From Mytilus trossulus (lineage: Eukaryota), in assembly GCF_036588685.1 (NCBI RefSeq), contig NC_086386.1, positions 15,376,001 to 15,440,000 of the forward strand: a stretch of 64,000 bases of DNA. The letters run 5' to 3'. The translations under genes were made by a program, and so were the position numbers. Positions 1 through 23,498 of this stretch are shown piece by piece. Within the stretch, counting starts at the first letter, position 1. Each line of letters begins with the position of its first letter. Under the pieces are notes generated by a model. The model had not been told where the DNA came from. It did not search any database and saw only the letters and a program-made list of their open reading frames with translations.

Positions 1-2691
1 TTTCAAGCAGCAGTTTCGTAAGATTAGTGTTTCCTGCCTGAGCAGTCAAATGCAATGGTGTTATACCATGTTTATCAGCTTGATTTACGATTGCACCTTC
101 TGCTATTAACATTTGAGCCATTTCTGTGTTACTCTCTTTGCATGCTAAATACAGTGGTGTCAATCCATCCTTATCCGTTTCGTTTACCTTGGAAGCAAAT
201 AACAATAACAGTTTAATAATGTCTATCTTTTTATCGCGACAGGCAATATATAGCGGAGTTAAGCCTTCATTCTCTATTTTATTTATGTCAGCTCCGTTTT
301 GTAACAGAATCTCTATCAAGTGCGAATAGCCTTGTTCACAGCAAATATGGAGAGGTGTCATACCATATTTATTTGTTTTATCAATTGAGACATTGTGCGC
401 ACACAATTCTTCAACAACCTTTTCATGTCCACCGAAACATGCAAGATGGAGTGGAGTGCATGATTCTTTATCTATGGCATTAGCATTTGCATTGTTTTTC
501 AGAAGAAGGGAAACAACGCCTTGTAGACCACGTTCACATGCCAAATGTAGTGGTGTTTTCTTATATAGGTTTTTGCAATTTACAATTGCATTGTGTTCTA
601 ACAACATCCTAATGATCATATTGGCATTACCATTATTACAAGCAATATGAAGTGGTGTTTCTCTACTTCTGTTGTTGAGATTAACATCTGCATTTTTCTC
701 CAATAACACTTTAACTATGAGATCATGACCGCCTTTACAAGCCCAGTGGAGTGGGGTAGATTCTGTTCTATCACGTTGATTTATGTCAACATTGTTTGAA
801 AGTAACAGCTGAACAATTTCAAGACATCCACCACTACAACTGCTATGTATTGGACGTTTTCCGTCTAAACTTTCTTTACAGGTGTCAGCACTGCTATTTA
901 ACAGGAGCTCAGCAATTCTACAATATTTATGCTCACAAGCTAAATATATTGCAGTTCTTCCTTTGTTGTCAGCAAGATTGATATCAGCATTATTTTTAAT
1001 CAACAGTTCAACAATTTCAACACATCCTTTCATCGAAGCTAAATGTAAAGGAGTGTGTCCAAATGTATCCGTTATATTAACCTTTGCATTTCCATGCAAT
1101 AATTTTTCAGCTATGCGTATATTTCCATTACTACAAACAACGTGTAATGCCGTTTTTAGATCTTTTATTCGTTGTTTTATTGTAGCACTCTTTGACAAAA
1201 GAACCGCTACTGTATCTGTATGACCACCAGCGCATGCCAAATCTAAAGGTGTATTTTCATTTTTATCCGTTTTGTCAATAAATGCTCCTTTCTTTAGTAA
1301 TAACTCTGCTGTATGACTATGTCCCTTGAGACAAGCCAGATGCAACGGAATTTGACCAGATCTATTTTCTTTGTTAACCAATGATTTGTCAAAGTGTAAG
1401 AAATATGTAAGATAGTCGTCATAACCTTCTAAAGATACAGCATGCACAACTGTTGAACCATCATCAGAGTTCTTTAAGTCATTCCGTTTTAACATTGTTT
1501 TAATATACGAAATAAACGCTTCTCTGAATTGTGGAAAGGCATTCTGCGTATCCGTTATTACATCCCAGAATATCCCTTGTTTTATATCGATTAGGATTCG
1601 GTCAAAGTATGCTTTTTCTAATACTAGTGGAATCATAATTGTCAACTTTGGAGGATGTCCTTTCAGAGACAAAAACTGAACTCTATCCTTTAGAAACGAC
1701 GTCTTACTATATTTCAGTAAACTTCGTAGGATACGTTGACTCATGACATGTGCAATTATATACACCAAAGTTTCGTTTATAAAGGAAAACCCATCTTCCG
1801 TTTCCATGCAATAAGATCCAACTAAGGCATTTAGACAAAAGAGTATTAGCTGTTTTGATGGTACTTGGGTATAACCTATTTCATTTGCCAAACCATGGAT
1901 AAGTTCATTAAAATGTCTATCTTGATTCTGATTATTGTTATCCTGGATAAGTTTTTCTTTTTTTACATTATTGTTCGAAATCACCATTAGTGCTAATGAA
2001 AAATAATGCAAATCTTTCGTTTTATTGCACTGTTCGATCTCTTCAGCGACATAACTATACGGTGTTGAAAAATATTCTACTGCATTTTCTTTTGTATCGG
2101 GTGAATATTTCGCGCACAGTGTAGGAAAGAATCTAAACTTCATAATGACTTCATTGCCTAATTGGTCTATTATCTCTGCATTTAAATATGATTTTCCTAT
2201 TTTTCGACGATTGTCTTCAGTCAGCTGTAAGTCTTCTCCGAGAAGGTTGAGATGAACAAAAGCTGACTTCACTGTTACAATGTCAACGGAATTATACATA
2301 TAAGACCTACAAGTTGCTAGTATCTTAAAATCCTTATTTCTATCTAAAAGCTTAAGAACCAAATTACCTTGTTTACTCCACCACATAGTATCATAATCAT
2401 GAACACTATACTTTCCGAATATATCATCAATTACAAATATCTGTTTCTTATCTTTAGATGCATATTTGACTATGTCGTCTGGGTTTGTAACAATCAATAG
2501 TTCGCACTCCTCAGTTTCCTCCAGAGTTAATGCTACGTGAAATGCCAGAGATGACTTCCCACTTCCTTGTGGTCCTGTAACAAGGATACACTGATCCTTC
2601 TTCATGCTTTCCAATATCGCTTTGGATGCCTCGGTTTCAACAAATCGATGCAAACGTTCTTGCCACTGCTTCTTTTCATAATTCTGTAGTT
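1..2691 (-). CDS. Large exon encoding an nSTAND3-like P-loop NTPase, helical region and at least 15 ankyrin repeats; open at the window edge
   Basis: Acceptor TTTTTGTAG at 2700-2692. Walker A VTGPQGSGKS (GPQGSGKS at 2575-2552), Walker B IFVIDDIFG (2440-2414), ILATCRS, FFPTLC. From ~1470 down to 1 there are 33-aa repeats (IPLHLAC, TPLDLAC, TPLHLAS, TPLHWAC, TPLHIAC, TPLYIAC...). The frame is the same at both ends; its absence from the ORF track fits a frame with no stop in the window. Confidence 0.93.
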
Positions 2692-5600
2692 CTACAAAAA
2701 ATTATAATCATTTAAGCAATTATTCAAATTTTTTTTCAGAATTATACTGACACAAAAAGTCAACCTGATTAACTATGTCACAGATTTTGGTGAAATTTCT
2801 TGTAACTTGATCTCGTAGTTTGATGAATTACAATCGAAAGTTTCAATTTATCTCTTTCATTTTTTTCAAATCTTATTTAAGGAAGTCTAACAGTATCTTA
2901 GTTAAAATATTCATGATCCATCTATTTATATCGAAGGGTTAAATATTTCTCAGTGATGTCCTGTCATGGCTTTGTTTGAATTTGGTTGTTAGATTTTCGG
3001 TCAATAATGTTTGTCTCTAATATTTAATTAACTGTGCATTTGTATTCAGATATCGCAGATCGAATTTATTCGTTCATTGTGTAATAATACGTTTTTTGAT
3101 TGAGTTAAATCTGCCAATGGATATTTTATCGTATGTTTTTCTATGTTGTGATGTTATGCTATTGTTTCAGAAAAAGGGAGAAGGTTTGGATCCATTAAAA
3201 CGTTTAATCCCGCTGCAGATGTTTGCACCTGTCCTAAGTCAGGAATCTTATGTACAGTAGTTGTCGTTTGTTTATGTAATATATATGTGTTTCTCGTTTC
3301 TCGTTTTGTTTATATAGATTAGACCGTTGGTTTTCCCGTTTGAATGCTTTTACACTAGTAATTTTTGGGCCCTTTATAGCTTGTTATTCGGTGTGAGCCA
3401 AAGCTCCGTGTTGAAGGCCATACTTTAACCTATAATGGTTTACTTTTTAAATTGTTATTTGGATTGAGAGTTGTCTCATTGGCACTCACACCACATCTTC
3501 CTATATCTATTTAAAAAAAAGTGACTTGTTGTTATGAGAGTCACTGTTGAATCCTGTGTAGACGAAACGCGCATCTGGCGCACTACATAATAATCCTGGT
3601 ACCTTTGTTAACTATTGTTACCAGTTTTGTAGTGTACAACTGTTTTTTAATCGAACAGTTTTTCAAAATTTGACACTTCATTGTGATTTTTACTTATAAT
3701 GATGATGCTCACTACAGTTCAAGTAGGTACAATGTTTTGTTTTTAAATTGTTTTCAAAAAACTTCAATCACATGATATTACTTTTCAACTAAAATGTACT
3801 TTAATTTAACAGACAACTTTTCTGAATACCTTAATAGGTCTTAACATTGTAATTTTGAAGTTCTCATGAGATTCCTAATATATATGCCAGCCTATGAAGG
3901 AATACTGGCAGAAATATGTTATGCTTACACATTGTATTCAAAATTGATAACGTTTAGCGTTATGTGAGTCATTGTCTTAAAATGCTTAAACATCCTGATT
4001 TAATTATTGACATGGACAAAAATACACAAGTTAAACTGAAAGTCATAGATCACAACAATATTTGGTAAAATCAAAGCTATGGTTTTCAATAATTATGGGT
4101 CATTCACTAATGCGCCTCAAAGTTAGGAACTCAAATTAAATGTGTACACAAGAAGCTACATATACATGCAGAAATATTGGACAAGTTGTTATTTTTATCA
4201 AATCACTGAGTATAACTATTTGTCTTGTATTGATTCAGTGTAAATATTCAGGAGTTAAAATTTTACAAAATACTTAAATTTAAGAGAAGGTTTTGTGTAA
4301 AAATAGCGATGTTTACAAGATACCTCATTACAGAGGTCTTTTAAGCTAGGCATTTTAAGTACCTGACGCAGCATACTAGTGAATCTTTGTAATGTACTGT
4401 TGCAGTGTAAAATACTATGGAGTTATTAAGTTTCACAAGGTACTAACTTTCTTTCAAGGGAAGGTTTTGTGTGAAAATTGGGGATGTGTTTACCTTGAGA
4501 AACAGCACCACAATGGGCTTTCAAGGTTGAATATTTAGTTACCGACTGTGCATAATTATTTTTTGGTACTGATTCATTGTGAATACTATGGAGTTCAATT
4601 TACCAGTTATTAAATATTCACAAAGTAGCAAATTTTTGAAGAGAAGGTTTGGTGGGAAAATAGAATTGTTTTATCTTGTGCAACCGCATTACAGACGACA
4701 ACAGCTGCAAATTGATTGTAGTATATTTATTCAGGCCAACTTGTACAATTTGAGATAAGCAAAATCTATTTTGTATAGTATGCCTTACCTTTGATGTTTT
4801 CTGGAATTGGATTATCAAGCCTATTCTTTAATTCTAAGTTTTCTCGCATAATAATTTCATATTGTATATGTCCATTTATGCTGCCTAAAATTGAAAAGGT
4901 AATGTGAAACTTCAAGAGAATACATAGTATTTATAAATGTGTGCTACTGTATCTAACCACTACATAGTTCTTTTTAAGTCGTCAGAATAAATGTCAGTGG
5001 TTTTGTCTGTGTAAATCATTTCCATACAAACCTTGCAGATACATCAATCATTTTGCTTTGATATGAGAACCTCTGTTTACTAAAATTGCCATTGATTTCT
5101 AAACAAAATAAAAGCTTTTACCTTGAGAGACTAGTTATGACCTTCTGATAGCATATTAATCTATTGCAATAAAAATTTATAATTTCAAATAAAATTTGTA
5201 GATTTAGCTAACTAAGTCCTTATATTTGTATAAAATAACATTCGTTTATAGTGGAACATTGTTAAAACTATGAATTAGCTGCAATCAAAATTTGCTTGCT
5301 AGTCCCTCTCTGTGATTACAAATAGATAACTCTGGCTCATTTCCCAATCAATCTGTCATGAAGGGAAGTCATTACTTGCAATTTTAATTCATAGTCTATT
5401 TCAAAAATGATAAAAAGTTCTTTATATTGGTATGTAAAAATTTTAAACGTTTCAAATTTATGAAATTATATTCGTACATCAATTGTTTTGATACATCAAT
5501 AACAAAAACTGAAATATATTGCATTGATTCATTTAGTAATTATTCAAAATTATATCAGAAACCTAAACGTAATTATAAAAAAAATGAACCTGTTAAGGGG

Positions 5601-8600
5601 AGACAATTCTCGTATAACTTTTTCGAATTGGCACATAATACCACGGAATGTCACTCATAATACAAATGGCACATCCATATAATTAATTAACAGCGCAAAC
5701 GCGCTCCACTTTCAATGATGATTCTGAATTATAAATATAACCAAAAGTTGTTAATCTATAGATAGTGAAGACTAATGAAAGCTAACCCACTGTAAAAATA
5801 TTTTTTTGCACTTTTTTAAAACTTCCTCAGGAAAAATTCTCTAGCCACTTGACTTTCATAGCTCAAAATTAACGTTTTTACAGAATATTTACAGATTATT
5901 CGCTTCTCAAAGTGTAAGACGCAATAAAAATCGTATGCTTGCACAATCTTACCGACATACGGATTTAATTGAGTCCTAAACATTTTGACATTTCTTCGTA
6001 TATTTTTTATCGAAAACCGGTTTAAACAAATCACACGTACGTGTTAAGATCCGACTAAATACCTATTTCCCGATATGGTCAGGTAAAATTGCTACTTCTG
6101 AATGATAAAGTCATAATCTAGTACACGAGAAAGAATCAAGACACTGTTCAGTTTTCTACAAAAGTAAAATTGCCTATCTATTTAAAGAAAAATGCATGCT
6201 CTATCTTATTAAAGCAATCGGTTTAAACAAATAAAACCGAATACAGAGACTATCAAATTGAAGTGTCTTTTTAACTATTATTCTTAATTACAACAAAAGG
6301 CTGTCAGAGTGAAGCACACCGCATGCAGATGTCGAACCCTGAACTAATGAACATGAGTTAGCACAATATTTAAGGTAAAAACAGTTCTGAATTCGTATTG
6401 TGATTAAATGTTTGATACAACGTAGGTTTTTGACACTATGTAGTCGAAATACTGTAAAATGTTACCCAAAAATCAATCGTTGATGAAATATTTTTAAAAT
6501 TAACTATTTCTGTTCAAAGCGAAATAACTCAAACTTATTTACACGGCGCAGTTATGTAAATCTAAAATTAGATCTGATTTAACCACTAGCACAATATTTC
6601 TCTAATTAGTTATCAAAGGTACCAGGATTCTAATTTAGTACGCCAGACGCGCGTTTCGTCTACACAAGACTCATCAGTGACGCTCTTATAAAATGAGATA
6701 TAATGTTTTCAAATTATAATCAAACATAATTAATATTTTGAAATATATTTTTCTTTCACTTGTCACCAACTAAAATATGTACAGATCTGCAGCTTATCTG
6801 CACAATATAAAGTGACTCAATAAGATAATAAGACATTAGAATAACTTTTAATTTCTGAAAGGGTACAACATTCAAGTAGTACAAATTTAACTGTCCTTCA
6901 TCTAGTCATATGAAACAACATATCTTAATTTGACGAAAAAAATCGTCAAGCGTTTTCATATACTATAAACCAACTTAATTTCGCGAGCGATTTATTTTCG
7001 CTACTTTCGTGATTAGAAAAATGACGCGAATTAAAATCGTCGCGAATATGTTTAACTTGGATCTTACCTTCTCTAAACACCTCTAGTAAATAAGAATGTC
7101 GCGAAATTAAATAGCAGTGAAGTTGACTAGATAGGGCTAAACGCGAAATAAAGTATCCGCGAAAATAAGTTGGTTTACAGTATATGAACGGACACTGTTT
7201 GGCAGCCGACCGCCCACACACCTGTGGTACATTCCCAAATCAATAACCAATATTTCCTAAAATTTGTTAAAAATTGAATAATAAAATAATGATCTAAAAT
7301 AAAATTCTCCATAACCATGTGGCACCGGATATGTTTTAATAAAAGACGTTTTTTCTCCACAATTATAGTCCAGTCACACTAAGATTTAACCTTAAACTAA
7401 TTGCAACAGAAAATGTTTTAGTTTTTAATGTTTTAATCTATAGCATTATGCCCTTTATATACATAGAAAAAAGTCCCATAAAACTTAACTTGAGAAAAAC
7501 TCAAAAAGAGCATTATTTGTCAGACTCAATTATATAATATTCTGCTCATGAAATGTACAAAACCGAAGTGTTATGGGTAGTTTAATTTTTTCGTGCATTT
7601 TTCATTTAAGAAATTTCAAATTTGAAGCTTTGTAACCATTTTGAAAAAAATAATGTGAAAATTTGGTATTGTTTCTATCTGTATATTATATTTTTTACAG
7701 CAACTTACCTATCTAAAGAAACTGTAAACCACAAAAAGAAGATTACACGCTTAATTATTTTTATTAAATGTTAGATTCTTTACCTTGACATGTTGAAAAA
7801 TTCAATAAATGGTCAACTAATGAATTACGAAATCTATATTATAACTTGATAAAATATATTTAAACACCTTTAGAGTTTTTAGTTATACTCTAAAGACTGC
7901 TAAAAAATCAAAAATCAATACATTTTGATGAATATAAGCGGTAAAGTTATTATTTTGTATCAATTTTTTTTTTAATTTCTGCCTTTTTGCCAGAGTTATC
8001 TCCCTTTTCAATGCAAATCTCCTTAGGAATTTTAAATGGTGATTTTTTTAGTCTTCCTCATGTTAGATATTATTGGACATTTTTCTGTATATATTTGGGA
8101 TATAAGGCTAAGGAGTAAAACTTAAAAATCTTCTGTTGCAAATACTAGATTGCTAGATTGACTGGACTATAAACAAAGATTATAATTTGTTTAGAATTTT
8201 CTAATTTTAGTATTCTAGTAAATCATATAATCCTTTTACTTGTATAAACTAGCTTACCACTAAGAGACCTGTCCAGGAAAACCGCACGCTTCATGATGAA
8301 AGCTGCAAATAAGACATATCAAAAAGCTAGTTCTTGTAAATCAGGTAATAACAGTTCAGTGTTTTTCAAATGTATCTTATAAGACGACGTCTTCAAAATC
8401 ACTGCCAAGACGTTAATAGGAACATTTTCATTTAAGTGCACTTACTCATATGAGCCATAGGCCGACGAATTTGAAAGTAAACCCATTGTAGGTTCTCTAT
8501 GATTTAAAAACCGTCATTGTGTCGGATACACACATAATTTGAGTGATGGGCTAGCAACTTATTTGATAAGGTGAATGTTACAAAGTCTAGATCAACTGAA

Positions 8601-11600
8601 GTGTTATATTTCACATCTAAACTCACATCTTATTTTAAATGTGCAACCAACGAAAATTCGCCATGTGAATTTTGATTTGGACGCAGACAGTTCAGCGCTG
8701 AACGTGAGTTTAAGAAAGTGTTATTTATTTTTTCTTTGCAGTTACATTGCGGAAGTTATACTATCTTTATTTCAACTAAATATATTCAAAAACAGGCAAA
8801 ACAAAAATAACTGAAAGCAATTTATAGACTTTGTGCGATATGTTTATTACGTATAACAATTTCGAACATTTCGTTGAAACCATATATAACAGGTACTATC
8901 CATCTCTTCAATATGGAAACTTGTTGGGGTTGAGATTCCGACGGTTTATGCACATACACTGTCGTAAGGTATTAACTCAGAATAAACATGCAATTCAATA
9001 CGATATATTTACCTAGTGCGAACAAAATTGCAGCCACAACTAACACAGTAATGACAGTTTTATATTCGTTTGACGAGTTGTATGCTGAAAAAAAAGTTGA
9101 TGTTATATTCGCTTACTGTCTTTACCACTTCTACTTAGTTAGCATGCTTACAATCATTTGTTCCTTTGATTTCAGTAAATTAATGGGTTAAATTTTATTG
9201 CAGAATTTTGTTAAAATGTATACTTGTATCAGTAAGTGTAGATCTTTTTCAAAGATTCTGACATTCAAAAATGCACTACCTTTAAATAAAGTTAGTTTTG
9301 CTTTCACACTTAAAATGTGTTGTGTCCTAACTGAACATGCTACTGAATAGTATAAATTGGCGCAGTAATTATGATAGACATAGATACCTATATTTTCTGT
9401 CTCTTTGCTATTTGGAATGAATGATGTAGTCGGTTTACTGTCTTTGTCACTGTTAAAATAGATTATCAAACTTTTATATTAACAACAATTTCGAAATTGA
9501 CAGATGTCTTTCAATGGCTTGAAACTTGCCAAGAAACACTTATTTAAAAACATGCCAGGCATATTTAGTAATGATGACTGCTCGATAAACACGTATGTAG
9601 ATGTTTTTTTTTTTTATTAAAAGTAAAGCCGCATTTATAGTTTGATTCCCGAAAATATGGAAAAAATATTATAAAAAAAAACAAAGTGTTTTGCATAGCT
9701 ATCAAGTTTTGTTTGTTTGAACACTGGTTGAATTTGAGTTCATAAGGTTTATATCATGATATATATATTTTTTAACATTGAATGACAAAACCAGATTACA
9801 GAATTAAACACTCTATACAATGTGATAGCAAAAAGAATATTGTTCAAAGATCGCAGTCTAATTGGAAACTGGCGAGTACAAATGAAAGTCAGAATTTACA
9901 AGAGAATACATTTGGCGTAATATATGAAATACAAACTGGTAAATTGTGCTTTTTAACTTGGGTAAATCAGGAAAGTAATGTTGGGATGTAAAATATAACA
10001 CACACACACGCTCTGTAACTGACAACGAATATCATTCATCGGGATGTTCTTCTTAAGATTAGTTATTTTCACCCACCATTGCAAACATTGTAAATATGAA
10101 TTAGTAAGTAAGTTAGTCAGTCAGTGAGTAAATTTATTTACAGTCGGCACTTATGTTCAATTGAATATAAGGAATGTAAGCTTTCATCTATTTACAAATC
10201 AGATCAAATATTGATTTAAAGATCTAGGGAATCAATACACAGGTACATGTATACTGCTTCAATCTCGAACAATATTCACAATCACCTAGCTAATCATCCG
10301 ATCCGACTCGTCTCAATTTGAATGTTTGAACAATATACCGTACGTTTTGAAAACAAAACCTTCAAAACTTGACTCGACAGCAAAACGGAATGCACTTTTT
10401 ATTCGAAATTTAAAATCATTGATATAGAAGTCGTATGTTGTAAAGAAATAATTTGTGTCCTAGAACGAGATGAATTATTTTTCCAAACGTGCATTTCGAG
10501 CACATAGCAATGCATAGAACACTTCATAAGCTGATGAAACATTTGAAACAACAAATTCGGTATTAAAGTAATATGAAAGTAACAACGTGTGAACTTATAT
10601 AGTATATTTATTGGAAATTCATACACAACAACATAGAATAAAAATGCTTACCGTTTAAGACGTACAGGTGGAACAAAAGATGCAGTTAAACTACAACCAA
10701 TAGTGGTGAAATGCAAGAATTTCTCAGAACGTGAAATTATACAAAAGGTTTCCAAACGTTTGAAAGTTACCACATTCGGATAAACATCAAATCACATGGT
10801 CATTTGCAACTAGGTAGGGTTTTATGTACAGAGGTGTTGTAAAATGATTCAATATTAGTGTAAATATTTAATAACTGACGATTGCATTCTTAAAAAAAAC
10901 ATATTCAGTAGAATAACAGGAGACTAGCTATGTAAAAGGTAGAACTAAATTGAGTTTGACATTCAAAATGAGATTGTGTGATATTTCCAAATACTACGAT
11001 TCTAAATGTAAGTTTAAACATTTGCAATTAAAAAAAAGTATTAACTAGGACTGCTATGAGAAACGACATTTGCAATTAAAAAAAAGTATAAACCAGGACT
11101 GCTATGAAAAATGACGTTTTTCGGTCATATAAGGGATCCATAAAACCAGTGTAAATCTTCTTTTTTTGTAAAACGAAATAGATGTGGTTTGTTTAACAAT
11201 GAGACACCTCTCCACATGACTGTTAAAAATATTAATTAATATTTTGCTCGTAGATTGTTAAGTTGTGTCAGTTAATATAATGATATAAGCTTGCATCAAA
11301 GCTAATTAATAGCATGCTATATAAGCATTACATATTGCCAAATAGGATGCTCACTATAACCATGATAATAACTTATATAACATTATATGTATTGTCTTTA
11401 AAACTTATCAAATATATTACTTTTGGTAAAATGAATATATTCTATAAGTCTAGACTTGTTTGTTAAATAAATAATTCTTTCTCATCCATACTATTTTCGA
11501 TATGGCACTGTTCAAAGTTAAATATGTTATATATATATATACATTTTTTGTAAATATAAACATATATATTACGAACTTCGTCTTTGATTTCTAGTACATT

Positions 11601-14600: not shown

Positions 14601-17600
14601 TGATAATATTTCAATTTCTGTAATCAAAACACAGGTAACAAACCTGCTGGATCATTATACGATCTCGTGTCACAAAATTCTTCAAACTCATCAGTATTTT
14701 CATCAAATAAACAGTGATAACCCTCAGAAATGTTACATTGACTGGCAGCTCTCAATTTCCATTCAGTTCGGGATGGACATTCAAACTCAGAGTAGCTTAA
14801 CACTGGTGTTGTTACAATAATCTATAAATAGAACAACTGTTATGAATTACAAACACCATTAACGACTGAATAAAGAAGAGAAAAATAAATTCAATATACG
14901 TATAAGCGATGCGGTATGATTATCTAAATGTAGATCAATGTTCATCAAAAACGTGATGAGTCGCATATATGAAGGATTAAACATTGTCTTTTCAAGTTAA
15001 ATGTTTAAGTTGCAATAAACTGTTTATCCTAAAAGTTTTGTTGCACGCGGTCGTTTAAAAAGTTTTAATTGAAATCAACATGAATCCTAGGGGATAATGT
15101 TATTATTTTTCAAACGTTACAAAATCTAGATTCCTAAAATTCCAATTTTGTAGAAACATTACGACTTTGGCACGATTTGTTGATTAAAATGTATTGAAAG
15201 TTCTGTTTATTATTGTTATATTAAGGTTGTTGATATTAAACTGTTATTGTTGATATCATTTTTTCGAGCAGACCAATGAAATTAGTTTCTTTAAATTGAA
15301 CACTTTCACAATTCAATATAAAAAAGAAGATGTGGTACAATGGCAAATGAGATATTTATACACAGGCAAAATTAGCTCACATGAATTTCTCATGAATCTC
15401 ACGTGAATTCACATGAAAAATGTCATGTGAGATTCACCTCAAACGAGCTTATACATGAAACCAACGTGAAATTTTTCATGTGAATTTCACGTAAATTGAG
15501 ATTCACACGAATCTTACGTGAATTGTTTCACATAAATTTCACCTGAAATTTACCAAAACAAAATGATATTTTTCATGATTTTAATTCAATTTGGAAATTT
15601 AGATGTTATTTGACATACTATATCTTAAAACAATCATGTGAATTAAATCACATGAAAACAAATTACATGATTTTCAGGTGAAATTCACACGAGTTTCCAA
15701 TAAGATTCGCGTGAAACTCACAAAAACTGATTTCATGTGAGTTTCACGTATAAGCTCGTCAGAGGTGAAATTGATGTAAATTTCACGTGAGATTCACATG
15801 AACTTAAATTCACGTGAAATTGATGTGAGTGAAATTTGCTTGTGTAGTTTTAATTCAACAAATAAAGATAGTCGGTAAGATACATCCATTACATAGTGTG
15901 CTAGTGACCTAATATGGTATATACGGGCCTGGGGTCAGTATATCCATAAAAGGCGATAGCGAACGAGCTTCGCTTTCACTCCATAGGGATGTACTGACCC
16001 CATACATATCGTTTTAGGTCACTAGCAAAAATTGTGTATTATATTTTACTAACTAAAGATATTTAAGTTTAAACATATTTTATTTGCTCAAAGCGAAAAA
16101 GGATCAGACACAAGTAAAACATACTTATAAAGTCTTCTCCACAATACAATATATATAACAATACAAATTGAACATGAGCATGCATCATATAATATAAACA
16201 ACATACATATTACTTATCTATACTGAAAAAAGTAAAGGGAATGAGGAAAGAACAACAGAGATTGTAAGTTGATGATGATAAAGATGATGATGTGCGTTTT
16301 ACCTATGTTGATACTATACTACGAGGAATCTTTTTGATCTCTTTATAAAATTGAATACTTGTTTAAGAATTTGCACATTTTGATCATAGGAAAGAGTTTC
16401 TTTTCCAAAAACCAGTAGAGTTAAGTCCAAATCGCAGCCTTCGGGAAGCCAGCTGAGACCATTAAACAGAATAGCCCTTTCATTTAAATAGAAAGGACAA
16501 TCGAAGAAAAAATGGTACATGTCCTCAATATCCAAACCACATTTACATGTTGGATCAGATATAATGTTAGCTCTAAACAAGTCACAATTCAAGAACGATG
16601 CCGAACATCTAAATTGGGTTAATATTATGTTCAATTTTCTTGGACCATATAAATAATGTTTTAAAATAGATTGATTCTCATTTCGAATTTCGTAGTTTTT
16701 TAATTCTAGTTTGAATTTTGATAACGAGTCTACATTTCGAACTGATATGTTCAAATTATTCCAAAGTTTAATTGTTGATGGGATAAAGGATTGGGAAGTC
16801 AGAGTCAGCCTGCAAAATGGTAAAATGATATCTTGTCCATTTCGCAAGGGATATTGTGTTGTACTTTGAATTTTAGGGGGCACAAGGTTACATAAATATT
16901 CAGGGGCATTATTATTCTGAATTTTATAAAATAATTGTAGTTTTCTTCTCTTTCTTCGTTCCTCTAAAGTTTCCCAACCAACCTCTTTTAAGACAGTCTC
17001 AGAGTGTGTGTAAACAGGCAAGCCTGTTACAATTCGTGCAGCTTCAAGTTGTAGCTGTTCTAATTTAATTGAATAACCTTTTTCGCAATTGTCCCATACT
17101 TCAGTTGCATATTCAACCAGATGCTCCGCAGGGCGTAGCTTTATACGACCGCAGAGGTTGAACCCTGAACGGTTGGGGCAAGTATGGACACAACATTCAA
17201 GCTGGATTCCGCTCTAAATTTGGATTGTTATTAAATAGTTGACACAGCATAGGTTTCTGACACAGAATGAATGTATTCAAATGAACTTAAAATTTTTGTT
17301 TTCTCTTAGAGCAATTCACTATGCTGTTGAATATTAATCCTCTCAAAAAAATGTTTGAAGAAATTTTCTTTTTATTTATGAAATTTCAAATGAGAAAATT
17401 TTAACCCAATTTTTTATTCACATCCCCCTTTCCCTTATTCCAAAACTAATTTCAATTAAAATATTCTAATGGAGTTTGCAACAATTACTACTCATTTAAA
17501 TACCTGATGTAAAAAAACTGCTTGTTATCACTGAATGGTAAAGATTATTTAAATTTATCAGTTGGTAGTAAAAAGTGAATATACATTGTATATTGTATAT

Positions 17601-18976
17601 AACAAAGATTTAAGTTGATTCTGGACAAAGAAAGATAACTCCAATTAAAAAAAATTCTTGCAGATATTTCTTGCTTACTATACTGGACAAACAAAGATAA
17701 CTCTTAATTAAAAAAAAAATTGCTATTTCACAATATTGTGAAATTAGATATTTCTTGCCATTGCACAATACTGTGCAATTGAAAAGACTTGCTATTGCAC
17801 AATACTTATTATAATAATTTTAGATCCTGATTTGGACCAACTTGAAAACTGGGCCCATAATCAAAAATCTAAGTACATCTTTAGATTCAGCATATCAAAG
17901 AGGCCCAAGAATTTATTTTTTGTTAAAATCAAACTTAGTTTAATTTTGGACCCTTTGAACTTTAATTTAGACCAATTTTAAAACTGGACCAAAAATTAAG
18001 AATCTACATACACAGTTAGATTTGGCATATCAAAGAACCCCAATTATTCAATTTTTGATGAAATCAAACAATGTTTAATTTTGGACCTCGATTTAGGCCA
18101 ACTTGAAAACTGGGCCAATAATCAAAAATCTAAGTACATTTTTAGATTCAGCATATCAAAGAACCCCAAGGTTTCAATTTTTGTTAAAATCAAACTAAGT
18201 TTAATTTTGGACCCTTTGGACCTTAATGTAGACCAATTTGAAAAAGGGACCAAAAATTAAGAATCTACATACACAGTTAGATTCGGCATATTAAAGAACC
18301 CCAATTATTCAATTTTGATGAAATCAAACAAAGTTTAATTTTGGACCCTTTGGGCCCCTTTTTCCTTAACTGTTGGGACCAAAACTTCCAAAATCAATAC
18401 CAACCTTCCTTTTATAGTCATAAACCTTGTGTTTAAATTTCATAGATTTCTATTCACTTATACTAACGCTATGGTGCGAAAACCAAGAAAAATGCTTATT
18501 TGGGTCCCTTTTTGGCCCCTAATTCCTAAACTGTTGGGACCGAAACTCCCAAAATCAATACCAACCTTCCTTTTGTGGTCATAAACATTGTGTTTAAATT
18601 TCATTGATTTCTATTTACTTTAACTAAAGTTATTGTGCGAAAACCAAGAATAATGCTTATTTGGGCCCTTTTTTGGCCCCTAATTCCTAAACTGTTGAAA
18701 ATAAAACTCCCAAAATCAATCCCAACCTTTATTTTGTGGTTATAAACCTTGTGTCAAAATTTCATAGATTTCTATTAACTTAAACTAAAGTTATAGTGCG
18801 AAAACCAAGAAAATGCTTATTTGGGCCCTTTTTGGCCCCTAATTCCTAAAATAATGGGACCAAAACTCCCAAAATCAATACCAGCCTTCCTTTCATGGTC
18901 ATAAACCTTGTGTTAAAATTTCATAGATTTCTATTCACTTTTACTAAAGTTAGAGTGCGAAAACTAAAAGTATTCG

Positions 18977-19008
<32 letters not shown>

Positions 19009-22000: not shown

Positions 22001-23498
22001 TTATATGAGCTGTAAAGTTCAAACATACTGTTGGTTTATAAAAGACGAATACCTACCAATATGGTAATAGTATTAAACACTTTATACTTGCAACTTGAGT
22101 ATACAGTTTTACATGATATGTATATATATAAATCAAACATAAATATTATGTACAATTGTGTGTGCACACAATACTATTTTGTAAAGAATTTAATCAGTAT
22201 CTCCTGGTTTCCTTTAATAGTGTTTAATTACAACAATAAGATTTTTTTACAGACAAAACTATGTACACGGAGAATATATTTGTACATTTACATGCATTCG
22301 ATTATTTCTTACTATCATATTTTGGTTCGTGTTTGGGTTAGGCAAGGGCGGTCTGTTTGACTTTTATATTTTTAAAAACTTCTTTTGATCAAAATCGACA
22401 TTTTTCGTTAATAGATTTATTTAATTACAAGCTATAAAAATGTACAATTAAGCTGATATGATTATAAGCAAAGTTGTCGAGAGAAGAACCGAACATGTGT
22501 ACGTTCACTATAGAATGTCAAATTTACACTGCTTTTTGTTTTTATTTTGAGTGATTGAGAAACGGTAATTTTATCAACTGTTGAAAAGATCTTACGATAT
22601 GTAAGACCATTTTACTACTTAGCCAATTTGGGATGACCGTTTTTATAGTTGTCATGATGTGGAAACATATTTTTGGGATTTTATTTTATTATTGAATTAC
22701 AGACTTTGGTTGTATTTTGGCCACCAGAACAACTAGAAGAAAATCCGCTAAACGGTTATAAAGTGTAATTAATTTAACCGTTATTAGAGCATATATAACA
22801 GGGAGGAAAACAGAACAAAACAGAACAAAATGAACTAAACATGAAAATAATTAAATCAAACATAAAAAAAAACAAAAAAACACACACACACAAAAAGCCC
22901 ACATATAACAAACAAACAGTGTCTAGGTTATAAAGTATTAGTAAACTTTTTTTTAAACTTTTGTTGATAAGATATCAAATTTTAAAGCTTGAATAAATCA
23001 GTTTTTGTACTGAACTGTACTGTAACAGTTGTATAAAAGACTAATCTTCAAAGATAACATACATTAGCAAAATATTATCTTAGATAGATTCTTTAATTTA
23101 AAACTGACTGTGTAGTGCATTTGTTTTAGAGATATCTAGTTCAAATGTGTAACTATAAAATAGTGATATTGATATATTGAAAACGAGTTTTAACAAGTTT
23201 AAATACTTGGTTTTGGGTAAAAGTTATCAAAAGTATAAATTGGGTTAAACAATTGTAACACAAATTCCAAAAGCATAACGGGTCATTTAGATGTGATTAA
23301 AAGTAAAGGTGCGTATCAATTCAAGAAGTTTCAACAGATATATGTAATGAACAATTATCGTTATAATGTATGTGTAGTAATGTAGATACCTTGTACATGT
23401 CTTAGGTCGTGTATTAGCTATAAACCATGATATGTTAAAATACTTACAAAAAGTAGACTCAACCAATTGAAGCAAAACATGTTGTATTTTTCACCCAT
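1..23498 (-). CDS. Predicted 9-exon gene (3' end beyond window): signal peptide - TNFR-like Cys-rich ectodomain - TM - nSTAND3-like NTPase - ankyrin repeats. Exons 23498-23448, 14821-14644, 13644-13342, 12125-12059, 9449-9388, 9084-9013, 8302-8258, 4884-4789, 2691-<1 (~1188 aa in window)
   Basis: All eight introns are GT..AG and the phases (0,1,1,2,1,1,1,1) join into one open frame. The domain order gives a coherent type I topology. No transcript evidence is available, and extra small exons are possible. Confidence 0.72.
3035..3511 (-). repeat. Dispersed SINE-like/retroposon-tail repeat; related copies at ~11620-11812, 35726-36040, 49530-49665, 57375-57520
   Basis: Shared blocks GAAGATGTGGTATGATTGCCAATGAGACAACT and GGCCTTCAACAATGAGCAAAGCCCATA (or reverse complements) recur with divergence at these positions. 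Confidence 0.75.
3536..3582 (+). ncRNA. Degenerate type I hammerhead ribozyme motif (retrozyme fragment)
   Basis: CTGTTGA-ATCCTGTGTAGAC-GAAA-CGCGCA-TC-TGGCG; core and stems are mutated relative to the 6639-6685 copy. Confidence 0.65.
4190..4700. repeat. Degenerate tandem repeat, ~175-180 bp x ~3
   Basis: GAAGGTTTTGTGT-like motif near 4286, 4460 and 4642; AATACTATGGAGTT at 4411 and 4582. Confidence 0.6.
4789..4884 (-). CDS. Cytoplasmic linker exon (SINGHIQYEIIMRENLELKNRLDNPIPENIK)
   Basis: TTCAATTTTAG acceptor, GTAAGG donor, 96 nt, phase 1-1. It joins in frame to give PIPENIK-E-LQNYEKKQW directly before the NTPase. Confidence 0.8.
6639..6685 (-). ncRNA. Intact minimal type I hammerhead ribozyme
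   Basis: Minus strand reads GAGCGUCA-CUGAUGA-GUC UUGUGUA GAC-GAAA-CGCGCG-UC|UGGCGUA. It has the canonical core, stem II, a palindromic minimal stem III, a GUC cleavage triplet and stem I GCGUCA/UGGCGU. Confidence 0.88.
6963..7180. mobile_element. Tc1/mariner-like MITE
   Basis: TIRs CTATAAACCAACTTAATTTCGCG / CGCGAAAATAAGTTGGTTTACAG, flanked by TA on both sides. Confidence 0.85.
7364..8171. mobile_element. Non-autonomous TIR DNA element
   Basis: Perfect 13-bp inverted ends TATAGTCCAGTCA / TGACTGGACTATA. Confidence 0.6.
8258..8302 (-). CDS. End of TM helix and juxtamembrane exon (AFIMKRAVFLDRSLS)
   Basis: TTATTTGCAG acceptor, GTAAGC donor, 45 nt, phase 1-1. It supplies the KR stop-transfer residues after the TM. 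Confidence 0.75.
9013..9084 (-). CDS. Transmembrane exon (YNSSNEYKTVITVLVVAAILFAL)
   Basis: TTTTTTTTCAG acceptor, GTAAAT donor, 72 nt, phase 1-1; hydrophobic run. Confidence 0.82.
9388..9449 (-). CDS. Stalk exon (DKDSKPTTSFIPNSKETENI)
   Basis: TTTTAACAG acceptor, GTATCT donor, 62 nt. Its phase 2-1 is exactly what is needed to bridge the neighbouring exons. Confidence 0.75.
10640..10790 (+). pseudogene. Decayed LINE ORF1-like fragment
   Basis: Translates QPIVVKCKNFSEREIIQKVSKRLKVTTFG, resembling the RPIVVKF..GI segment of LINE ORF1 proteins. Confidence 0.45.
12059..12125 (-). CDS. Ectodomain exon (DYECISKTVWTGTFTCALIHYNG)
   Basis: TCTTTCAG acceptor, GTGAGT donor, 67 nt, phase 1-2; continues ...IMTP-DYEC. 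Confidence 0.82.
12821..13036. mobile_element. Short MITE with internal AGATTAGAGAA repeats
   Basis: Ends ATGAGGGTTTAGA / TCCAGACCCTCAT are imperfect inverted repeats. Confidence 0.55.
13342..13644 (-). CDS. TNFR-like cysteine-rich ectodomain exon
   Basis: Lies within ORF 13283..13651. CKEEGQVIHTEGTADSDRQCRC resembles the GT-x3-D-x2-C signature of TNFR cysteine-rich repeats. 303 nt, phase 1-1, AG/GT bounded. Confidence 0.85.
14644..14821 (-). CDS. N-terminal Cys-rich exon (IIVTTPVLSYSEFECPSRTEWKLRAASQCNISEGYHCLFDENTDEFEEFCDTRSYNDPA)
   Basis: CTATTTATAG acceptor, GTTTGT donor, 178 nt, phase 0-1; 4-Cys module CP..W..RA...C....YHCL.D......EFC. Confidence 0.85.
15359..15846. mobile_element. Foldback MITE built of TTCACGTGAA/TTCACATGAA units
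   Basis: Ends TACACAGGCAAAATTAGCTCACAT / ATGTGAGTGAAATTTGCTTGTGTA; the halves are roughly inverted (AAACGAGCTTATAC vs GTATAAGCTCGT). Confidence 0.75.
15891..16040. mobile_element. Small palindromic MITE
   Basis: TGCTAGTGACCTAA..GGGGTCAGTA inverted against TACTGACCCC..TTAGGTCACTAGCA. Confidence 0.7.
17117..19061. mobile_element. Helentron/HINE-like non-autonomous element nested in the LINE
   Basis: It interrupts LINE codons FIRPIF/EYATEVW within an A-run. Subterminal inverted repeats TTTATACGACCGCA (17140) / TGCGGTCGTATAAA (19049), a 3' hairpin, a (CGA)n microsatellite at ~18978-19007 and internal tandem arrays. Confidence 0.82.
17830..18965. repeat. Two adjacent tandem arrays: ~130-bp units arranged as a ~260-bp dimer (17830-18350) and ~161-bp units x ~4 (18350-18965)
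   Basis: GCATATCAAAGA-like motif recurs 4 times. CTGTTGGGAC at 18370 and 18531 with variants near 18692 and 18851. Confidence 0.85.
21488..21513 (-). other. 2A-like (StopGo) motif variant GNIEPNPGP ahead of the LINE endonuclease
   Basis: FILIVGNIEPNPGP in ORF 21256..21744; the consensus is D(V/I)ExNPGP, here with D replaced by N. Confidence 0.75.
23448..23498 (-). CDS. First coding exon, signal peptide (MGEKYNMFCFNWLSLLF)
   Basis: ATG at 23498 and GTAAGT donor in phase 0. It joins IIVTTPVLS to complete a signal peptide. An acceptor at 23510-23509 implies an upstream exon. Confidence 0.7.

What the first reader, a model, noticed from the sequence alone, without database searches (positions are those of the whole stretch)
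1..23498. Membrane-anchored STAND receptor: TNFR-like ectodomain + TM fused to an nSTAND3-like NTPase and ankyrin array
Seen: nine minus-strand exons splice in phase into signal peptide, Cys-rich ectodomain (~230 aa), TM TVITVLVVAAILFALAFIM-KR, a short linker, an NTPase with intact Walker A GPQGSGKS and Walker B IFVIDDIFG, and at least 15 ankyrin repeats. Established: TNFR-family receptors signal through death domains or TRAF-binding tails, while STAND NTPases (NLRs, Apaf-1, bacterial Avs) are mostly cytosolic switches with an N-terminal effector and a C-terminal repeat sensor. Inference: a cell-surface receptor module occupies the effector position here. Extracellular ligand clustering could drive STAND oligomerisation, or ankyrin sensing could signal inside-out. 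I know of no characterised receptor with this architecture, but I cannot search to confirm novelty.
Basis: partly seen in the sequence, partly recalled or inferred. Interest (0 to 1): 0.9.

Follow-up and report, generated by a model that had tools for sequence, protein, structure and literature searches.

The report
Mussel TNFR-like membrane STAND-ankyrin receptor gene
This is a real, intact nine-exon mussel gene for a single-pass membrane protein with a TNF-receptor-like outer domain and an NLR-type ATPase switch plus about 16 ankyrin repeats inside the cell; it belongs to a large mussel-only receptor family, and a similar architecture has already been catalogued in oysters but never tested.

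Summary
Nine minus-strand exons (23498 down past base 1; the stop lies about 205 nt beyond the window start) have GT-AG borders and compatible phases. They encode 1257 codons: signal peptide, 16-Cys ectodomain, TM helix, 60-aa linker, nSTAND3 NTPase (Pfam 92 bits) and 15-16 ankyrin repeats. RefSeq models of 1249-1256 aa in three other Mytilus species have the same layout. Short intron-less Logan contigs join head, TM and nSTAND3 in paralogs.

"TNFR-like" is supported by predicted fold only. In two structure searches the top hits were all TNFR-family ectodomains (Fas Z 6.4; CD40 probability 0.99). No sequence profile matches.

The novelty claim is overstated:
- Kaur et al. 2021 list oyster proteins with "cysteine-rich-region+TM+...+TRADD-N+nSTAND3+Ankyrin".
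- Sea-cucumber AjNLRC4 is a characterised TM-NACHT receptor.
- This scan had already found CARD- and HEPN-nSTAND3-ankyrin genes elsewhere in this genome.

New here:
- The head has a TNFR-like fold.
- It has at least 150 copies in this genome, and all named relatives are from Mytilus.
- It is fused in turn to nSTAND3, CARD-nSTAND3, HEPN, Roc-COR or Ig-AIG1 modules.
- In this gene it joins the STAND module without a TRADD-N or Death adaptor.

RNA evidence for this locus could not be obtained. The locus's own gene call is a head-less 1010-aa model.

The parts
23448..23498 (-). Exon 1: start codon and 17 codons of the signal peptide (MGEKYNMFCFNWLSLLF); GTAAGT donor
   Evidence: 76% identical to the N-terminus of M. 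edulis P0003. An AG lies just upstream of the ATG, so a non-coding 5' exon is possible.
14644..14821 (-). Exon 2: end of the signal peptide and the N-terminal cap of the ectodomain (4 Cys, one NIS glycosylation sequon); ends in phase 1
   Evidence: 93-95% identical to P0003/P0004. In the model of paralog P0023 this part forms a helix plus a hairpin.
13342..13644 (-). Exon 3 (phase 1-1): core of the Cys-rich ectodomain, 10 Cys, with motifs YQPF, CRCDY and EDCSCY
   Evidence: 97% identical to P0004. At least 150 copies in the same genome at E < 4e-20. TNFR-like fold in the family model.
12059..12125 (-). Exon 4: last Cys pair of the ectodomain (DYEC...FTC); ends in phase 2
9388..9449 (-). Exon 5: Ser/Thr/Pro-rich stalk
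   Evidence: 100% identical to P0004
9013..9084 (-). Exon 6 (phase 1-1): NSS sequon and most of the transmembrane helix
   Evidence: mean Kyte-Doolittle hydropathy is 2.93 over TVITVLVVAAILFAL. The helix continues as AFIM in exon 7 and is followed by KR, which fits the positive-inside rule.
8258..8302 (-). Exon 7 (phase 1-1): end of the TM helix, the KR stop-transfer and the start of the cytoplasmic linker. The locus's own truncated gene call P0001 starts at the Met here.
4789..4884 (-). Exon 8 (phase 1-1): conserved juxtamembrane segment (IMRENLELKNRLDNPIPENIK)
   Evidence: 90-97% identical to P0003/P0004 and 84% to the paralog P0005
1..2691 (-). Exon 9, starting in phase 1: nSTAND3 NTPase, helical region and ankyrin array. 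It continues about 203 nt beyond window base 1 to the stop.
2183..2644 (-). nSTAND3 P-loop NTPase domain: Walker A at 2552-2575, Walker B at 2423-2440, sensor-1-like LATCR at 2306-2320
   Evidence: PF20720, 92.3 bits against a cut-off of 27.2, profile positions 1-153 of 155
1..1387 (-). Ankyrin repeat array, 15-16 repeats with a 33-residue period (the last two lie beyond the window start)
   Evidence: Ank 321 bits, Ank_2 410 bits

Best explanation
This is an intact gene of Mytilus trossulus for a type I membrane protein. Its parts, in order, are: a signal peptide; a glycosylated 16-Cys ectodomain whose predicted fold is a TNFR-type ladder of Cys-rich domains; one TM helix; a conserved 60-residue juxtamembrane segment; an nSTAND3 P-loop NTPase with all catalytic motifs; a helical region; and 15-16 ankyrin repeats. 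It belongs to a subfamily of at least 20 genes on the same chromosome. That subfamily sits within a family found only in Mytilus, in which the same head is joined to alternative cytoplasmic switch or effector modules: nSTAND3-ANK, CARD-nSTAND3, HEPN, Roc-COR and Ig-AIG1.

The most likely mode of action is inferred, not shown. The head would bind an extracellular, probably multivalent ligand, in the way TNFR-family receptors bind trimeric ligands. The resulting clustering would bring the cytoplasmic nSTAND3 modules together and favour their NTP-dependent oligomerisation. This would build a membrane-bound signalling platform in which the ankyrin array acts as an autoinhibitory or partner-recruiting surface. 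The role would be in immunity or cell death. In effect, receptor and STAND switch would be collapsed into one polypeptide, without a Death or TRADD-type adaptor domain.
For: Gene model:
- Canonical splice sites and compatible phases.
- Exon-by-exon matches to RefSeq proteins of 1249-1256 aa in M. galloprovincialis, M. edulis and M. californianus.
- Logan contigs too short to hold introns join head, TM and nSTAND3 in paralogs: P0026 (324 aa on 1020 nt), P0090 (410 aa on 1581 nt, nSTAND3) and P0187 (563 aa on 2049 nt, CARD+nSTAND3).

Domains:
- nSTAND3 at 92 bits and ankyrin at over 300 bits; motifs confirmed.
- Head fold: AF2 model of paralog P0023, pLDDT 87. All listed Foldseek hits are TNFRSF ectodomains (CD40 E 5e-3, probability 0.99). 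VIA-align ranks 1-25 are all TNFRSF (Fas Z 6.4, rmsd 2.7 over 88 residues; HVEM 6.2; 4-1BB 6.0), and the best unrelated row is Z 3.0.

Family logic favouring the head as the input:
- One head type precedes nSTAND3, HEPN_DZIP3, Roc-COR, Ig-AIG1 or CARD modules.
- About 21 head/nSTAND3 exon pairs lie on the same strand, 6-54 kb apart, on contig C14 (cross-read by eye).
- The head is held at 93-97% identity across species, as expected for a module with a specific conserved partner.

Precedents:
- Receptor-like Cys-rich-TM-...-nSTAND3-ankyrin proteins in oysters, read by their authors as sensing external stimuli (PMC8195603).
- AjNLRC4, a membrane Ig-TM-NACHT receptor.
Against:
- The collection's own gene call here (P0001, 1010 aa) starts in exon 7 and lacks the head.
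- No sequence profile links the head to TNFRs. The fold scores are modest (Z below 8) and come from a predicted model of a paralog that is about 50% identical in the core.
- No ligand is known, and no effector domain is recognisable.
- In every studied STAND protein, including the nSTAND3-bearing Avs5, the C-terminal repeats are the sensor.
- Here the ankyrin array is the fastest-changing part (68-69% identity to orthologs, against 93-97% for the head), which points to sensing or conflict inside the cell.
Confidence: 0.5

Rival explanations
1. Membrane-anchored cytosolic sensor, or coincidence detector. As in other STAND proteins, the ankyrin array would be the ligand sensor for an intracellular pathogen or stress molecule. 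The TM and head would then tether the switch to a membrane, provide a second permissive input, or act as the clustered output (inside-out signalling or shedding).
For: - The ankyrin array diverges fastest: 68-69% identity to orthologs, against 77-83% for the NTPase and 93-97% for the head.
- The nearest in-genome paralogs keep 66-69% identity in head exon 3 but only 40-41% in the NTPase region.
- The same nSTAND3-ankyrin chassis carries CARD or HEPN in the N-terminal slot in cytosolic paralogs (earlier findings).
- In bacterial Avs5 (SIR2-nSTAND3-TPR), the repeats are thought to recognise phage ligands.
Against: - The same head precedes unrelated cytoplasmic modules that have no repeat sensor, such as HEPN and Roc-COR. 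This is easier to explain if the head is the input.
- A glycosylated TNFR-fold ectodomain is a ligand-binding module wherever it has been studied (established knowledge).
- Fast change in the ankyrin array may partly reflect gene conversion or repeat shuffling. P0004 and P0005 share 91% in the ankyrin array but only 69% in the head.
Confidence: 0.3
2. At this locus in M. trossulus the functional product is the head-less 1010-aa cytosolic protein of the existing gene call. Exons 1-6 would be unused, for instance because the LINE inserted in intron 1 (which is 8.6 kb in all) or an internal promoter has uncoupled them.
For: - P0001, the collection's gene call for this locus, begins at the Met of exon 7.
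- A sense-oriented LINE remnant of about 5.4 kb (RT and endonuclease) sits in intron 1.
- No RNA data could be obtained.
Against: - Exons 1-6 are all open, with intact splice sites, and are 65-100% identical to the orthologs. That is unexpected for abandoned exons.
- The P0001 start lies inside the TM helix, which is typical of a truncated prediction.
- Three sister species have full-length models.
Confidence: 0.12
3. Two separate genes, a small secreted or membrane Cys-rich protein and a cytosolic nSTAND3-ankyrin protein, have been wrongly joined by gene predictors.
For: Many head-only models of 190-260 aa exist in Mytilus annotations, for example P0178, P0103 and P0188.
Against: - All introns are phase-compatible, with no stop or terminal-exon signal after the TM exon.
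- Exons 7 and 8 would have no function in either separate gene, yet exon 8 is 90-97% conserved.
- Intron-less Logan contigs join head, TM and nSTAND3 in paralogs.
Confidence: 0.03

Closest known systems
Crassostrea virginica receptor-like TRADD-N proteins (e.g. [quoted passage not shown] 2021, eLife (PMC8195603)
   Same: A bivalve lineage-specific expansion. The layout is signal or TM segment, Cys-rich ectodomain and TM helix, then cytoplasmic nSTAND3 plus ankyrin repeats. The same set of alternative C-terminal modules occurs (STAND, HEPN, AIG1 GTPase, Death-like).
   Different: The mussel protein is half the size (1257 against about 2660 aa). It has only a 60-aa linker between the TM helix and the NTPase, with no DED, alpha-rich region or TRADD-N. 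Whether the two Cys-rich regions are homologous was not tested. My searches with the mussel head found only Mytilus proteins. The oyster proteins are catalogued in silico only.
TNF receptor superfamily ectodomains (Fas, CD40, HVEM, 4-1BB, TNFR1)
   Same: The predicted fold is an elongated ladder of disulfide-bonded Cys-rich domains in a type I membrane protein.
   Different: No TNFR_c6 or other sequence-profile match. There is an extra N-terminal helix-hairpin cap. The cytoplasmic part is a STAND NTPase instead of a death domain or TRAF-binding tail. The ligand is unknown.
Pseudomonas aeruginosa Avs5 (SIR2-nSTAND3-TPR/PPR), anti-jumbo-phage defence (bioRxiv 10.1101/2025.07.08.663546)
   Same: It shares the nSTAND3 (PF20720) NTPase followed by a helical-repeat array. 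It is the only nSTAND3 protein with functional data that I found.
   Different: It is bacterial and cytosolic, with an N-terminal SIR2 effector. The PADLOC scan of the mussel NTPase gave only a candidate-system hit (PDC-S73, 4e-11) and no Avs model.
Sea cucumber AjNLRC4 (extracellular Ig - TM - intracellular NACHT) and anthozoan NLRs with TM domains
   Same: These are animal STAND NTPases anchored in a membrane with an extracellular domain. According to PMC13133943, AjNLRC4 regulates phagocytosis of Vibrio. Anthozoan NLRs with TM domains are described in PMC5094078.
   Different: They use a different NTPase clade (NACHT rather than nSTAND3), a different head (Ig or a multi-TM segment), no ankyrin array, and belong to different phyla. 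The fusions arose independently.
Cytosolic Mytilus CARD-CARD-nSTAND3-ankyrin and HEPN-nSTAND3-ankyrin genes
   Same: The same genome and the same nSTAND3-helical-ankyrin chassis, encoded in one large exon. The family has at least 96 scored copies out of 479 candidates.
   Different: Those proteins carry an intracellular effector or adaptor at the N-terminus. This one carries a signal peptide, a TNFR-like head and a TM helix.

Membership tests
STAND NTPases, nSTAND3 clade (Pfam PF20720) | Profile match above the curated cut-off over the whole domain | tested here: met
   92.3 bits against a cut-off of 27.2, profile positions 1-153 of 155. Ortholog P0004 scores 90.7 bits.
STAND NTPases, nSTAND3 clade (Pfam PF20720) | Intact Walker A (GxxxxGK[ST]), Walker B (hhhhDD) and a sensor-1-type Arg | tested here: met
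   GPQGSGKS, IFVIDD, LATCR
STAND NTPases, nSTAND3 clade (Pfam PF20720) | A helical region after the NTPase, followed by a C-terminal array of superstructure-forming repeats | tested here: met
   15-16 ankyrin repeats follow a stretch of about 260 aa that has no Pfam match. The fold of that stretch was not modelled.
STAND NTPases, nSTAND3 clade (Pfam PF20720) | Nucleotide-dependent oligomerisation on activation | not testable with these tools
   This needs biochemistry or cryo-EM.
TNF receptor superfamily | Sequence signature of TNFR Cys-rich domains (Pfam TNFR_c6 or a related profile) | tested here: not met
   Pfam at E up to 10 on each ectodomain exon found nothing relevant. phmmer and a family profile against PDB sequences found no TNFR.
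TNF receptor superfamily | Elongated ladder of disulfide-bonded Cys-rich domains (fold) | tested here: met
   The test used a predicted model of paralog P0023 (pLDDT 87). All listed Foldseek rows are TNFRSF (best E 4.8e-3, probability 0.99; TMt up to 0.64). VIA-align ranks 1-25 are all TNFRSF (Z 6.4 to 3.5, covering residues about 40-180), and the next row is unrelated at Z 3.0. Caveats: the absolute scores are modest and the model is not of the window protein itself.
TNF receptor superfamily | Binds a trimeric TNF-family ligand | not testable with these tools
   No ligand candidate was examined.
TNF receptor superfamily | Cytoplasmic death domain or short TRAF-binding tail | tested here: not met
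   Searches found no Death, TIR or other adaptor domain. The cytoplasmic part is nSTAND3 plus ankyrin repeats. TRAF motifs were not scanned systematically.
Bivalve receptor-like NCOA6-type TRADD-N expansion (Kaur et al. 2021) | N-terminal Cys-rich extracellular region followed by a TM helix | tested here: met
   Homology of the Cys-rich regions themselves was not tested.
Bivalve receptor-like NCOA6-type TRADD-N expansion (Kaur et al. 2021) | Intracellular DED plus NCOA6-clade TRADD-N module after the TM helix | tested here: not met
   Only about 60 residues separate the TM helix from nSTAND3. Pfam on the full-length ortholog P0004 reports only nSTAND3 and ankyrin families.
Bivalve receptor-like NCOA6-type TRADD-N expansion (Kaur et al. 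2021) | Variable C-terminal module drawn from STAND, HEPN, AIG1 GTPase, Death-like domains and repeats | tested here: met
   the mussel head occurs with nSTAND3+ANK, HEPN_DZIP3, Roc-COR, Ig+AIG1 and CARD+nSTAND3.
Transmembrane NLRs (AjNLRC4 type) | NACHT NTPase domain | tested here: not met
   NACHT is not among the Pfam hits; the NTPase is nSTAND3.

The most novel reading that the evidence does not exclude
Mussels of the genus Mytilus have built a receptor superfamily of their own, with hundreds of genes. In it, a TNFR-fold head is joined to interchangeable cytoplasmic switches: STAND, ROCO and GIMAP/AIG1 GTPases, HEPN RNases and CARD. The observed phase-1 exon borders are compatible with joining by exon shuffling, though no shuffling event was tested. 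In the nSTAND3 branch, clustering by an extracellular ligand, possibly one of the expanded TNF/C1q-type trimeric proteins, would directly nucleate a STAND signalosome at the membrane. The receptor-adaptor-apoptosome chain would then be one polypeptide, with the fast-evolving ankyrin array as a second, intracellular checkpoint.
Probability: 0.25. Interest if true: 0.75.

Novelty: new variant of a known kind. Interest (0 to 1): 0.55.

Why it matters
STAND and NLR switches are textbook cytosolic sensors, and TNFR-type receptors are textbook users of adaptors. A natural protein that welds a TNFR-fold head to a STAND NTPase with no adaptor domain would allow a direct test of one question: is induced proximity from outside the cell enough to fire a STAND switch?

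The family-level picture is one conserved head type, at least 150 copies, at least five kinds of cytoplasmic module, and presence only in Mytilus as far as these searches reach. It adds a concrete, foldable ectodomain to the "receptor-like" bivalve architectures that were catalogued in oysters but left as an unnamed Cys-rich region. It also bears on how sessile bivalves, which lack adaptive immunity and face transmissible cancers and dense microbial exposure, diversify their recognition systems.

The individual gene is ordinary for this genome, and its orthologs are already in RefSeq as uncharacterised proteins.

Tried and rejected
Each exon was searched by reference, and full-length analyses used database orthologs (P0003-P0006).
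- Sequence annotation of the head: Pfam, PDB sequences with one sequence, PDB sequences with a 29-member profile and the ESM Atlas all gave nothing.
- First structure model: exon 3 alone was too poor to use (pLDDT 64). Its searches gave only weak TNFR-enriched lists. I replaced it with a whole-ectodomain model of paralog P0023.
- Sushi/CCP-like reading of the head: considered. It was rejected because, with the better model, CCP rows fall to Z 3.0 or less, below 25 TNFRSF rows.
- PDB sequence search of the NTPase and helical region: only generic P-loop hits.
- PADLOC: only a candidate-system model, PDC-S73.
- Relatives of the head outside Mytilus: none appeared. These searches rely on shared words or list only the best 150 hits, so absence elsewhere is not shown.
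- Rest of the window (24-64 kb): no ORF with a Pfam domain.
Full report
**What is there**

The window is G000:C14:15376001-15440000 of a 1.3-Gb genome. The genome is Mytilus trossulus. Proteins named for that species sit on the same 81,773,519-bp contig as the window's own gene call.

On the minus strand a very long open frame runs off the window start. In the flanking locus L001 it ends with a stop 204-206 nt before window base 1, giving a last exon of 965 whole codons. Pfam finds nSTAND3 in it (PF20720, 92.3 bits against a cut-off of 27.2, 153 of 155 profile positions). The remaining hits are ankyrin families (Ank 321 bits, Ank_2 410 bits). Walker A (GPQGSGKS), Walker B (IFVIDD) and a sensor-1-like LATCR are intact. 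Ankyrin motifs recur every 33 residues, giving 15-16 repeats.

**The gene model**

I mapped the upstream exons with tblastn of the RefSeq protein P0004 (M. galloprovincialis LOC143085123, 1256 aa). It hit nine collinear pieces. Reading the borders fixed the CDS exons:

| Exon | Coordinates (minus strand) |
|---|---|
| 1 | 23498-23448 |
| 2 | 14821-14644 |
| 3 | 13644-13342 |
| 4 | 12125-12059 |
| 5 | 9449-9388 |
| 6 | 9084-9013 |
| 7 | 8302-8258 |
| 8 | 4884-4789 |
| 9 | 2691 to beyond base 1 |

Every intron is GT-AG, the phases are compatible and no exon carries a stop. The sum is 3771 nt, or 1257 codons.

Exons were analysed one by one by reference, and whole-protein questions were put to database orthologs.

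Full-length models with the same order of parts exist in M. edulis (P0003, 1255 aa), M. galloprovincialis (P0004 of 1256 aa, and P0005 of 1265 aa) and M. californianus (P0006, 1249 aa; paralog P0009, 1238 aa).

The collection's own call for this locus (P0001, 1010 aa) starts at the Met inside exon 7, at the cytoplasmic end of the TM helix. That looks like a truncated prediction.

**Transcript evidence**

Indirect evidence exists for paralogs. Three Logan contigs are too short to contain introns, yet each encodes head, TM and the start of nSTAND3 in one frame:
- P0026: 324 aa on 1020 nt.
- P0090: 410 aa on 1581 nt, with nSTAND3.
- P0187: 563 aa on 2049 nt, with CARD plus nSTAND3.

**Topology**

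Exon 1 plus the start of exon 2 give a typical signal peptide. The ectodomain exons hold 16 Cys and two N-x-S/T sequons. The stretch TVITVLVVAAILFAL-AFIM has a mean hydropathy of 2.93 and is followed by KR. No comparably hydrophobic segment occurs in the last exon. This is a type I membrane protein, with the NTPase and ankyrin repeats in the cytoplasm.

**Is the head TNFR-like?**

By sequence, no. Pfam at E up to 10 on each exon, phmmer against PDB sequences, a 29-sequence family profile against PDB sequences and the ESM Atlas all gave nothing.

By predicted fold, yes, with modest scores. A model of exon 3 alone was poor (pLDDT 64). A model of the whole ectodomain of paralog P0023, built with a 57-row alignment, reached pLDDT 87 and pTM 0.68.

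- Foldseek against the PDB listed only TNFR-superfamily ectodomains: CD40, DcR3, 4-1BB, OPG, TNFR1, DR5, Fas, OX40, DR6, p75NTR, HVEM and RANK. The best E-value was 4.8e-3, probabilities were up to 1.00 and TMt was up to 0.64.
- VIA-align against 48,161 representative chains, which is independent of Foldseek, put TNFRSF chains at ranks 1-25. Fas scored Z 6.4 (rmsd 2.7 Å over 88 residues), HVEM 6.2 and 4-1BB 6.0, covering residues about 40-180. The first unrelated row scored Z 3.0.

I therefore accept "TNFR-like fold" and reject "member of the TNFR family by sequence". The N-terminal 40 residues of the mature head (exon 2) form a helix plus a hairpin and were barely covered by the structural matches (residues 41-180).

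**The family**

Exon 3 has at least 150 scored copies in this genome, out of 212 candidates, all with E < 4e-20 and almost all open. A profile of 29 copies found 389 clusters (at 50% identity) among 1.84 billion proteins, 335 of them at E < 1e-10. Every hit that carries a name is from Mytilus: trossulus, edulis, galloprovincialis, coruscus or californianus.

Pfam on 42 longer members shows the head in front of different cytoplasmic modules:

| Module | Members (of 42) |
|---|---|
| nSTAND3 (6 of these with ankyrin repeats) | 10 |
| HEPN_DZIP3 | 9 |
| Roc | 5 |
| COR-A | 4 |
| AIG1 GTPase | 3 |
| Ig domains | about 10 |

Individual architectures confirm this:
- head-nSTAND3-ANK (P0042)
- head-nSTAND3 (P0152)
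- head-Roc-COR (P0040, P0108, P0153)
- head-HEPN (P0116, P0154)
- head-Ig-AIG1 (P0094)
- head-CARD-nSTAND3 (P0187)

nSTAND3 itself has at least 96 scored copies out of 479 candidates in this genome. I cross-read by eye. About 21 loci on contig C14 have a head exon and an nSTAND3 exon on the same strand, 6-54 kb apart:
- This gene, plus three neighbours with head exons at 14.89, 15.10 and 15.25 Mb.
- One at 4.50 Mb.
- About 14 in the array at 51.5-52.6 Mb.
- Two at 58.9-59.1 Mb.

The nSTAND3 copies most similar to this one are almost all head-linked. The more distant ones on C3, C8, C10 and C11 are not paired with any head exon in the listed 150.

**Rates of change**

Identity of the window's exons to the closest proteins of other species:

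| Region | Identity |
|---|---|
| Head | 93-97% |
| Juxtamembrane exon 8 | 90-97% |
| nSTAND3 | 82-83% |
| Helical region | 79-81% |
| Ankyrin array | 68-69% |

The same gradient holds among P0003, P0004 and P0006. It also holds for the nearest in-genome paralogs, which keep 66-69% in head exon 3 but only 40-41% in the NTPase region.

P0004 and P0005 are two M. galloprovincialis genes on the same contig with near-consecutive LOC numbers. They share 91% in the ankyrin array but only 69% in the head, which suggests gene conversion or exchange of the 3' exon.

So the cytoplasmic half is the diversifying part, and the head of a given orthogroup is held constant.

**What is known**

[quoted passage not shown] They described a Crassostrea virginica expansion of about 50 proteins. 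These have a constant N-terminal cysteine-rich extracellular domain, a TM helix, and DED plus TRADD-N, followed by variable STAND, HEPN, AIG-GTPase, Death-like and repeat modules. [quoted passage not shown] They suggest that external stimuli such as adhering pathogens or immunocytes trigger these receptor-like proteins.

Two other precedents matter:
- A membrane-localised Ig-TM-NACHT receptor (AjNLRC4) of a sea cucumber has been studied functionally, and anthozoan NLRs with N-terminal TM domains are described.
- The only nSTAND3 protein with functional data that I found is bacterial Avs5 (SIR2-nSTAND3-TPR).

Earlier reports of this scan describe CARD-CARD- and HEPN-nSTAND3-ankyrin genes in the same genome.

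The architecture is therefore a variant of a catalogued bivalve theme, not a new category. The differences are these:
- There is no TRADD-N, DED or alpha-rich region; only 60 residues separate the TM helix from the NTPase.
- The head has a TNFR-type predicted fold.
- The head family is Mytilus-specific as far as these searches see, and very large.

**How it probably works (inference)**

The family logic is one ligand-binding-type head with many alternative cytoplasmic outputs. This argues that the head is the input. Binding of a multivalent extracellular ligand would cluster the receptors and bring the nSTAND3 modules close enough for NTP-dependent oligomerisation. The ankyrin array would act as autoinhibitor and docking surface. 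I give this 0.5.

The main rival (0.3) keeps the canonical STAND logic. The fast-evolving ankyrin array would sense something in the cytoplasm, and the head and TM would supply localisation, a second input or the clustered output.

A head-less product at this locus (0.12) and a two-gene artefact (0.03) are less likely, for the reasons given under the rival explanations.

**Verdict**

The finding is a new variant of a known, computationally described kind. The individual gene is ordinary for this genome. The family-level picture is of moderate to good interest.

Noticed in passing
window 6640-6683 (-), inside intron 7 (8257-4885): A type I hammerhead ribozyme motif lies in the same orientation as the gene. 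It matches Rfam RF00163 at 32.6 bits over the full 45-position model, just under the gathering score of 34, with E 3.6e-6 in a 701-nt search. It was not reported in the whole-window search at gathering threshold. It is probably part of the retrozyme-like repeats another reader noted at 50.5-56.6 kb.
   Followed up: partly
window ~16317-21765 (-), inside intron 1: A decayed LINE lies in the same orientation as the gene. The endonuclease (Exo_endo_phos, 2.7e-6) and reverse transcriptase (RVT_1, 1.5e-29) ORFs are split over three frames. It accounts for about 5.4 kb of the 8.6-kb first intron. It may be why the locus's own gene call misses the upstream exons.
   Followed up: partly
window 2916-3000, intron 8 just upstream of the last exon: A 70-85-nt element is repeated at 39 or more other places in the genome at 89-95% identity. 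It is a short interspersed repeat or MITE fragment.
   Followed up: no
P0004 and P0005 (M. galloprovincialis LOC143085123 and LOC143085125): These two genes, on the same contig with near-consecutive LOC numbers, share 91% identity in the ankyrin array but only 69% in the ectodomain. This looks like gene conversion or exchange of the 3' exon between tandem copies.
   Followed up: partly
P0178, P0103, P0188 and other models of 190-260 aa: Many annotated Mytilus proteins consist of the signal peptide and the TNFR-like head only. They could be soluble decoy-type forms or merely truncated gene models.
   Followed up: no
P0187 (Logan contig, 2049 nt): This transcript-like contig encodes head, CARD (309-387) and nSTAND3 (447-555). 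It links the membrane branch of the family to the cytosolic CARD-nSTAND3-ankyrin genes found earlier by the scan.
   Followed up: partly
G000:C14 51.4-52.7 Mb and 58.7-62.2 Mb: Dense tandem arrays of head exons lie here. Many are followed within 6-29 kb by an nSTAND3 exon on the same strand (cross-read by eye). One pair, at 51.65 Mb, has a TAA stop in the NTPase exon.
   Followed up: partly
window 24000-64000: Only four ORFs of 130 aa or more occur here, and none has a Pfam domain. No second gene of the family lies in the window.
   Followed up: partly
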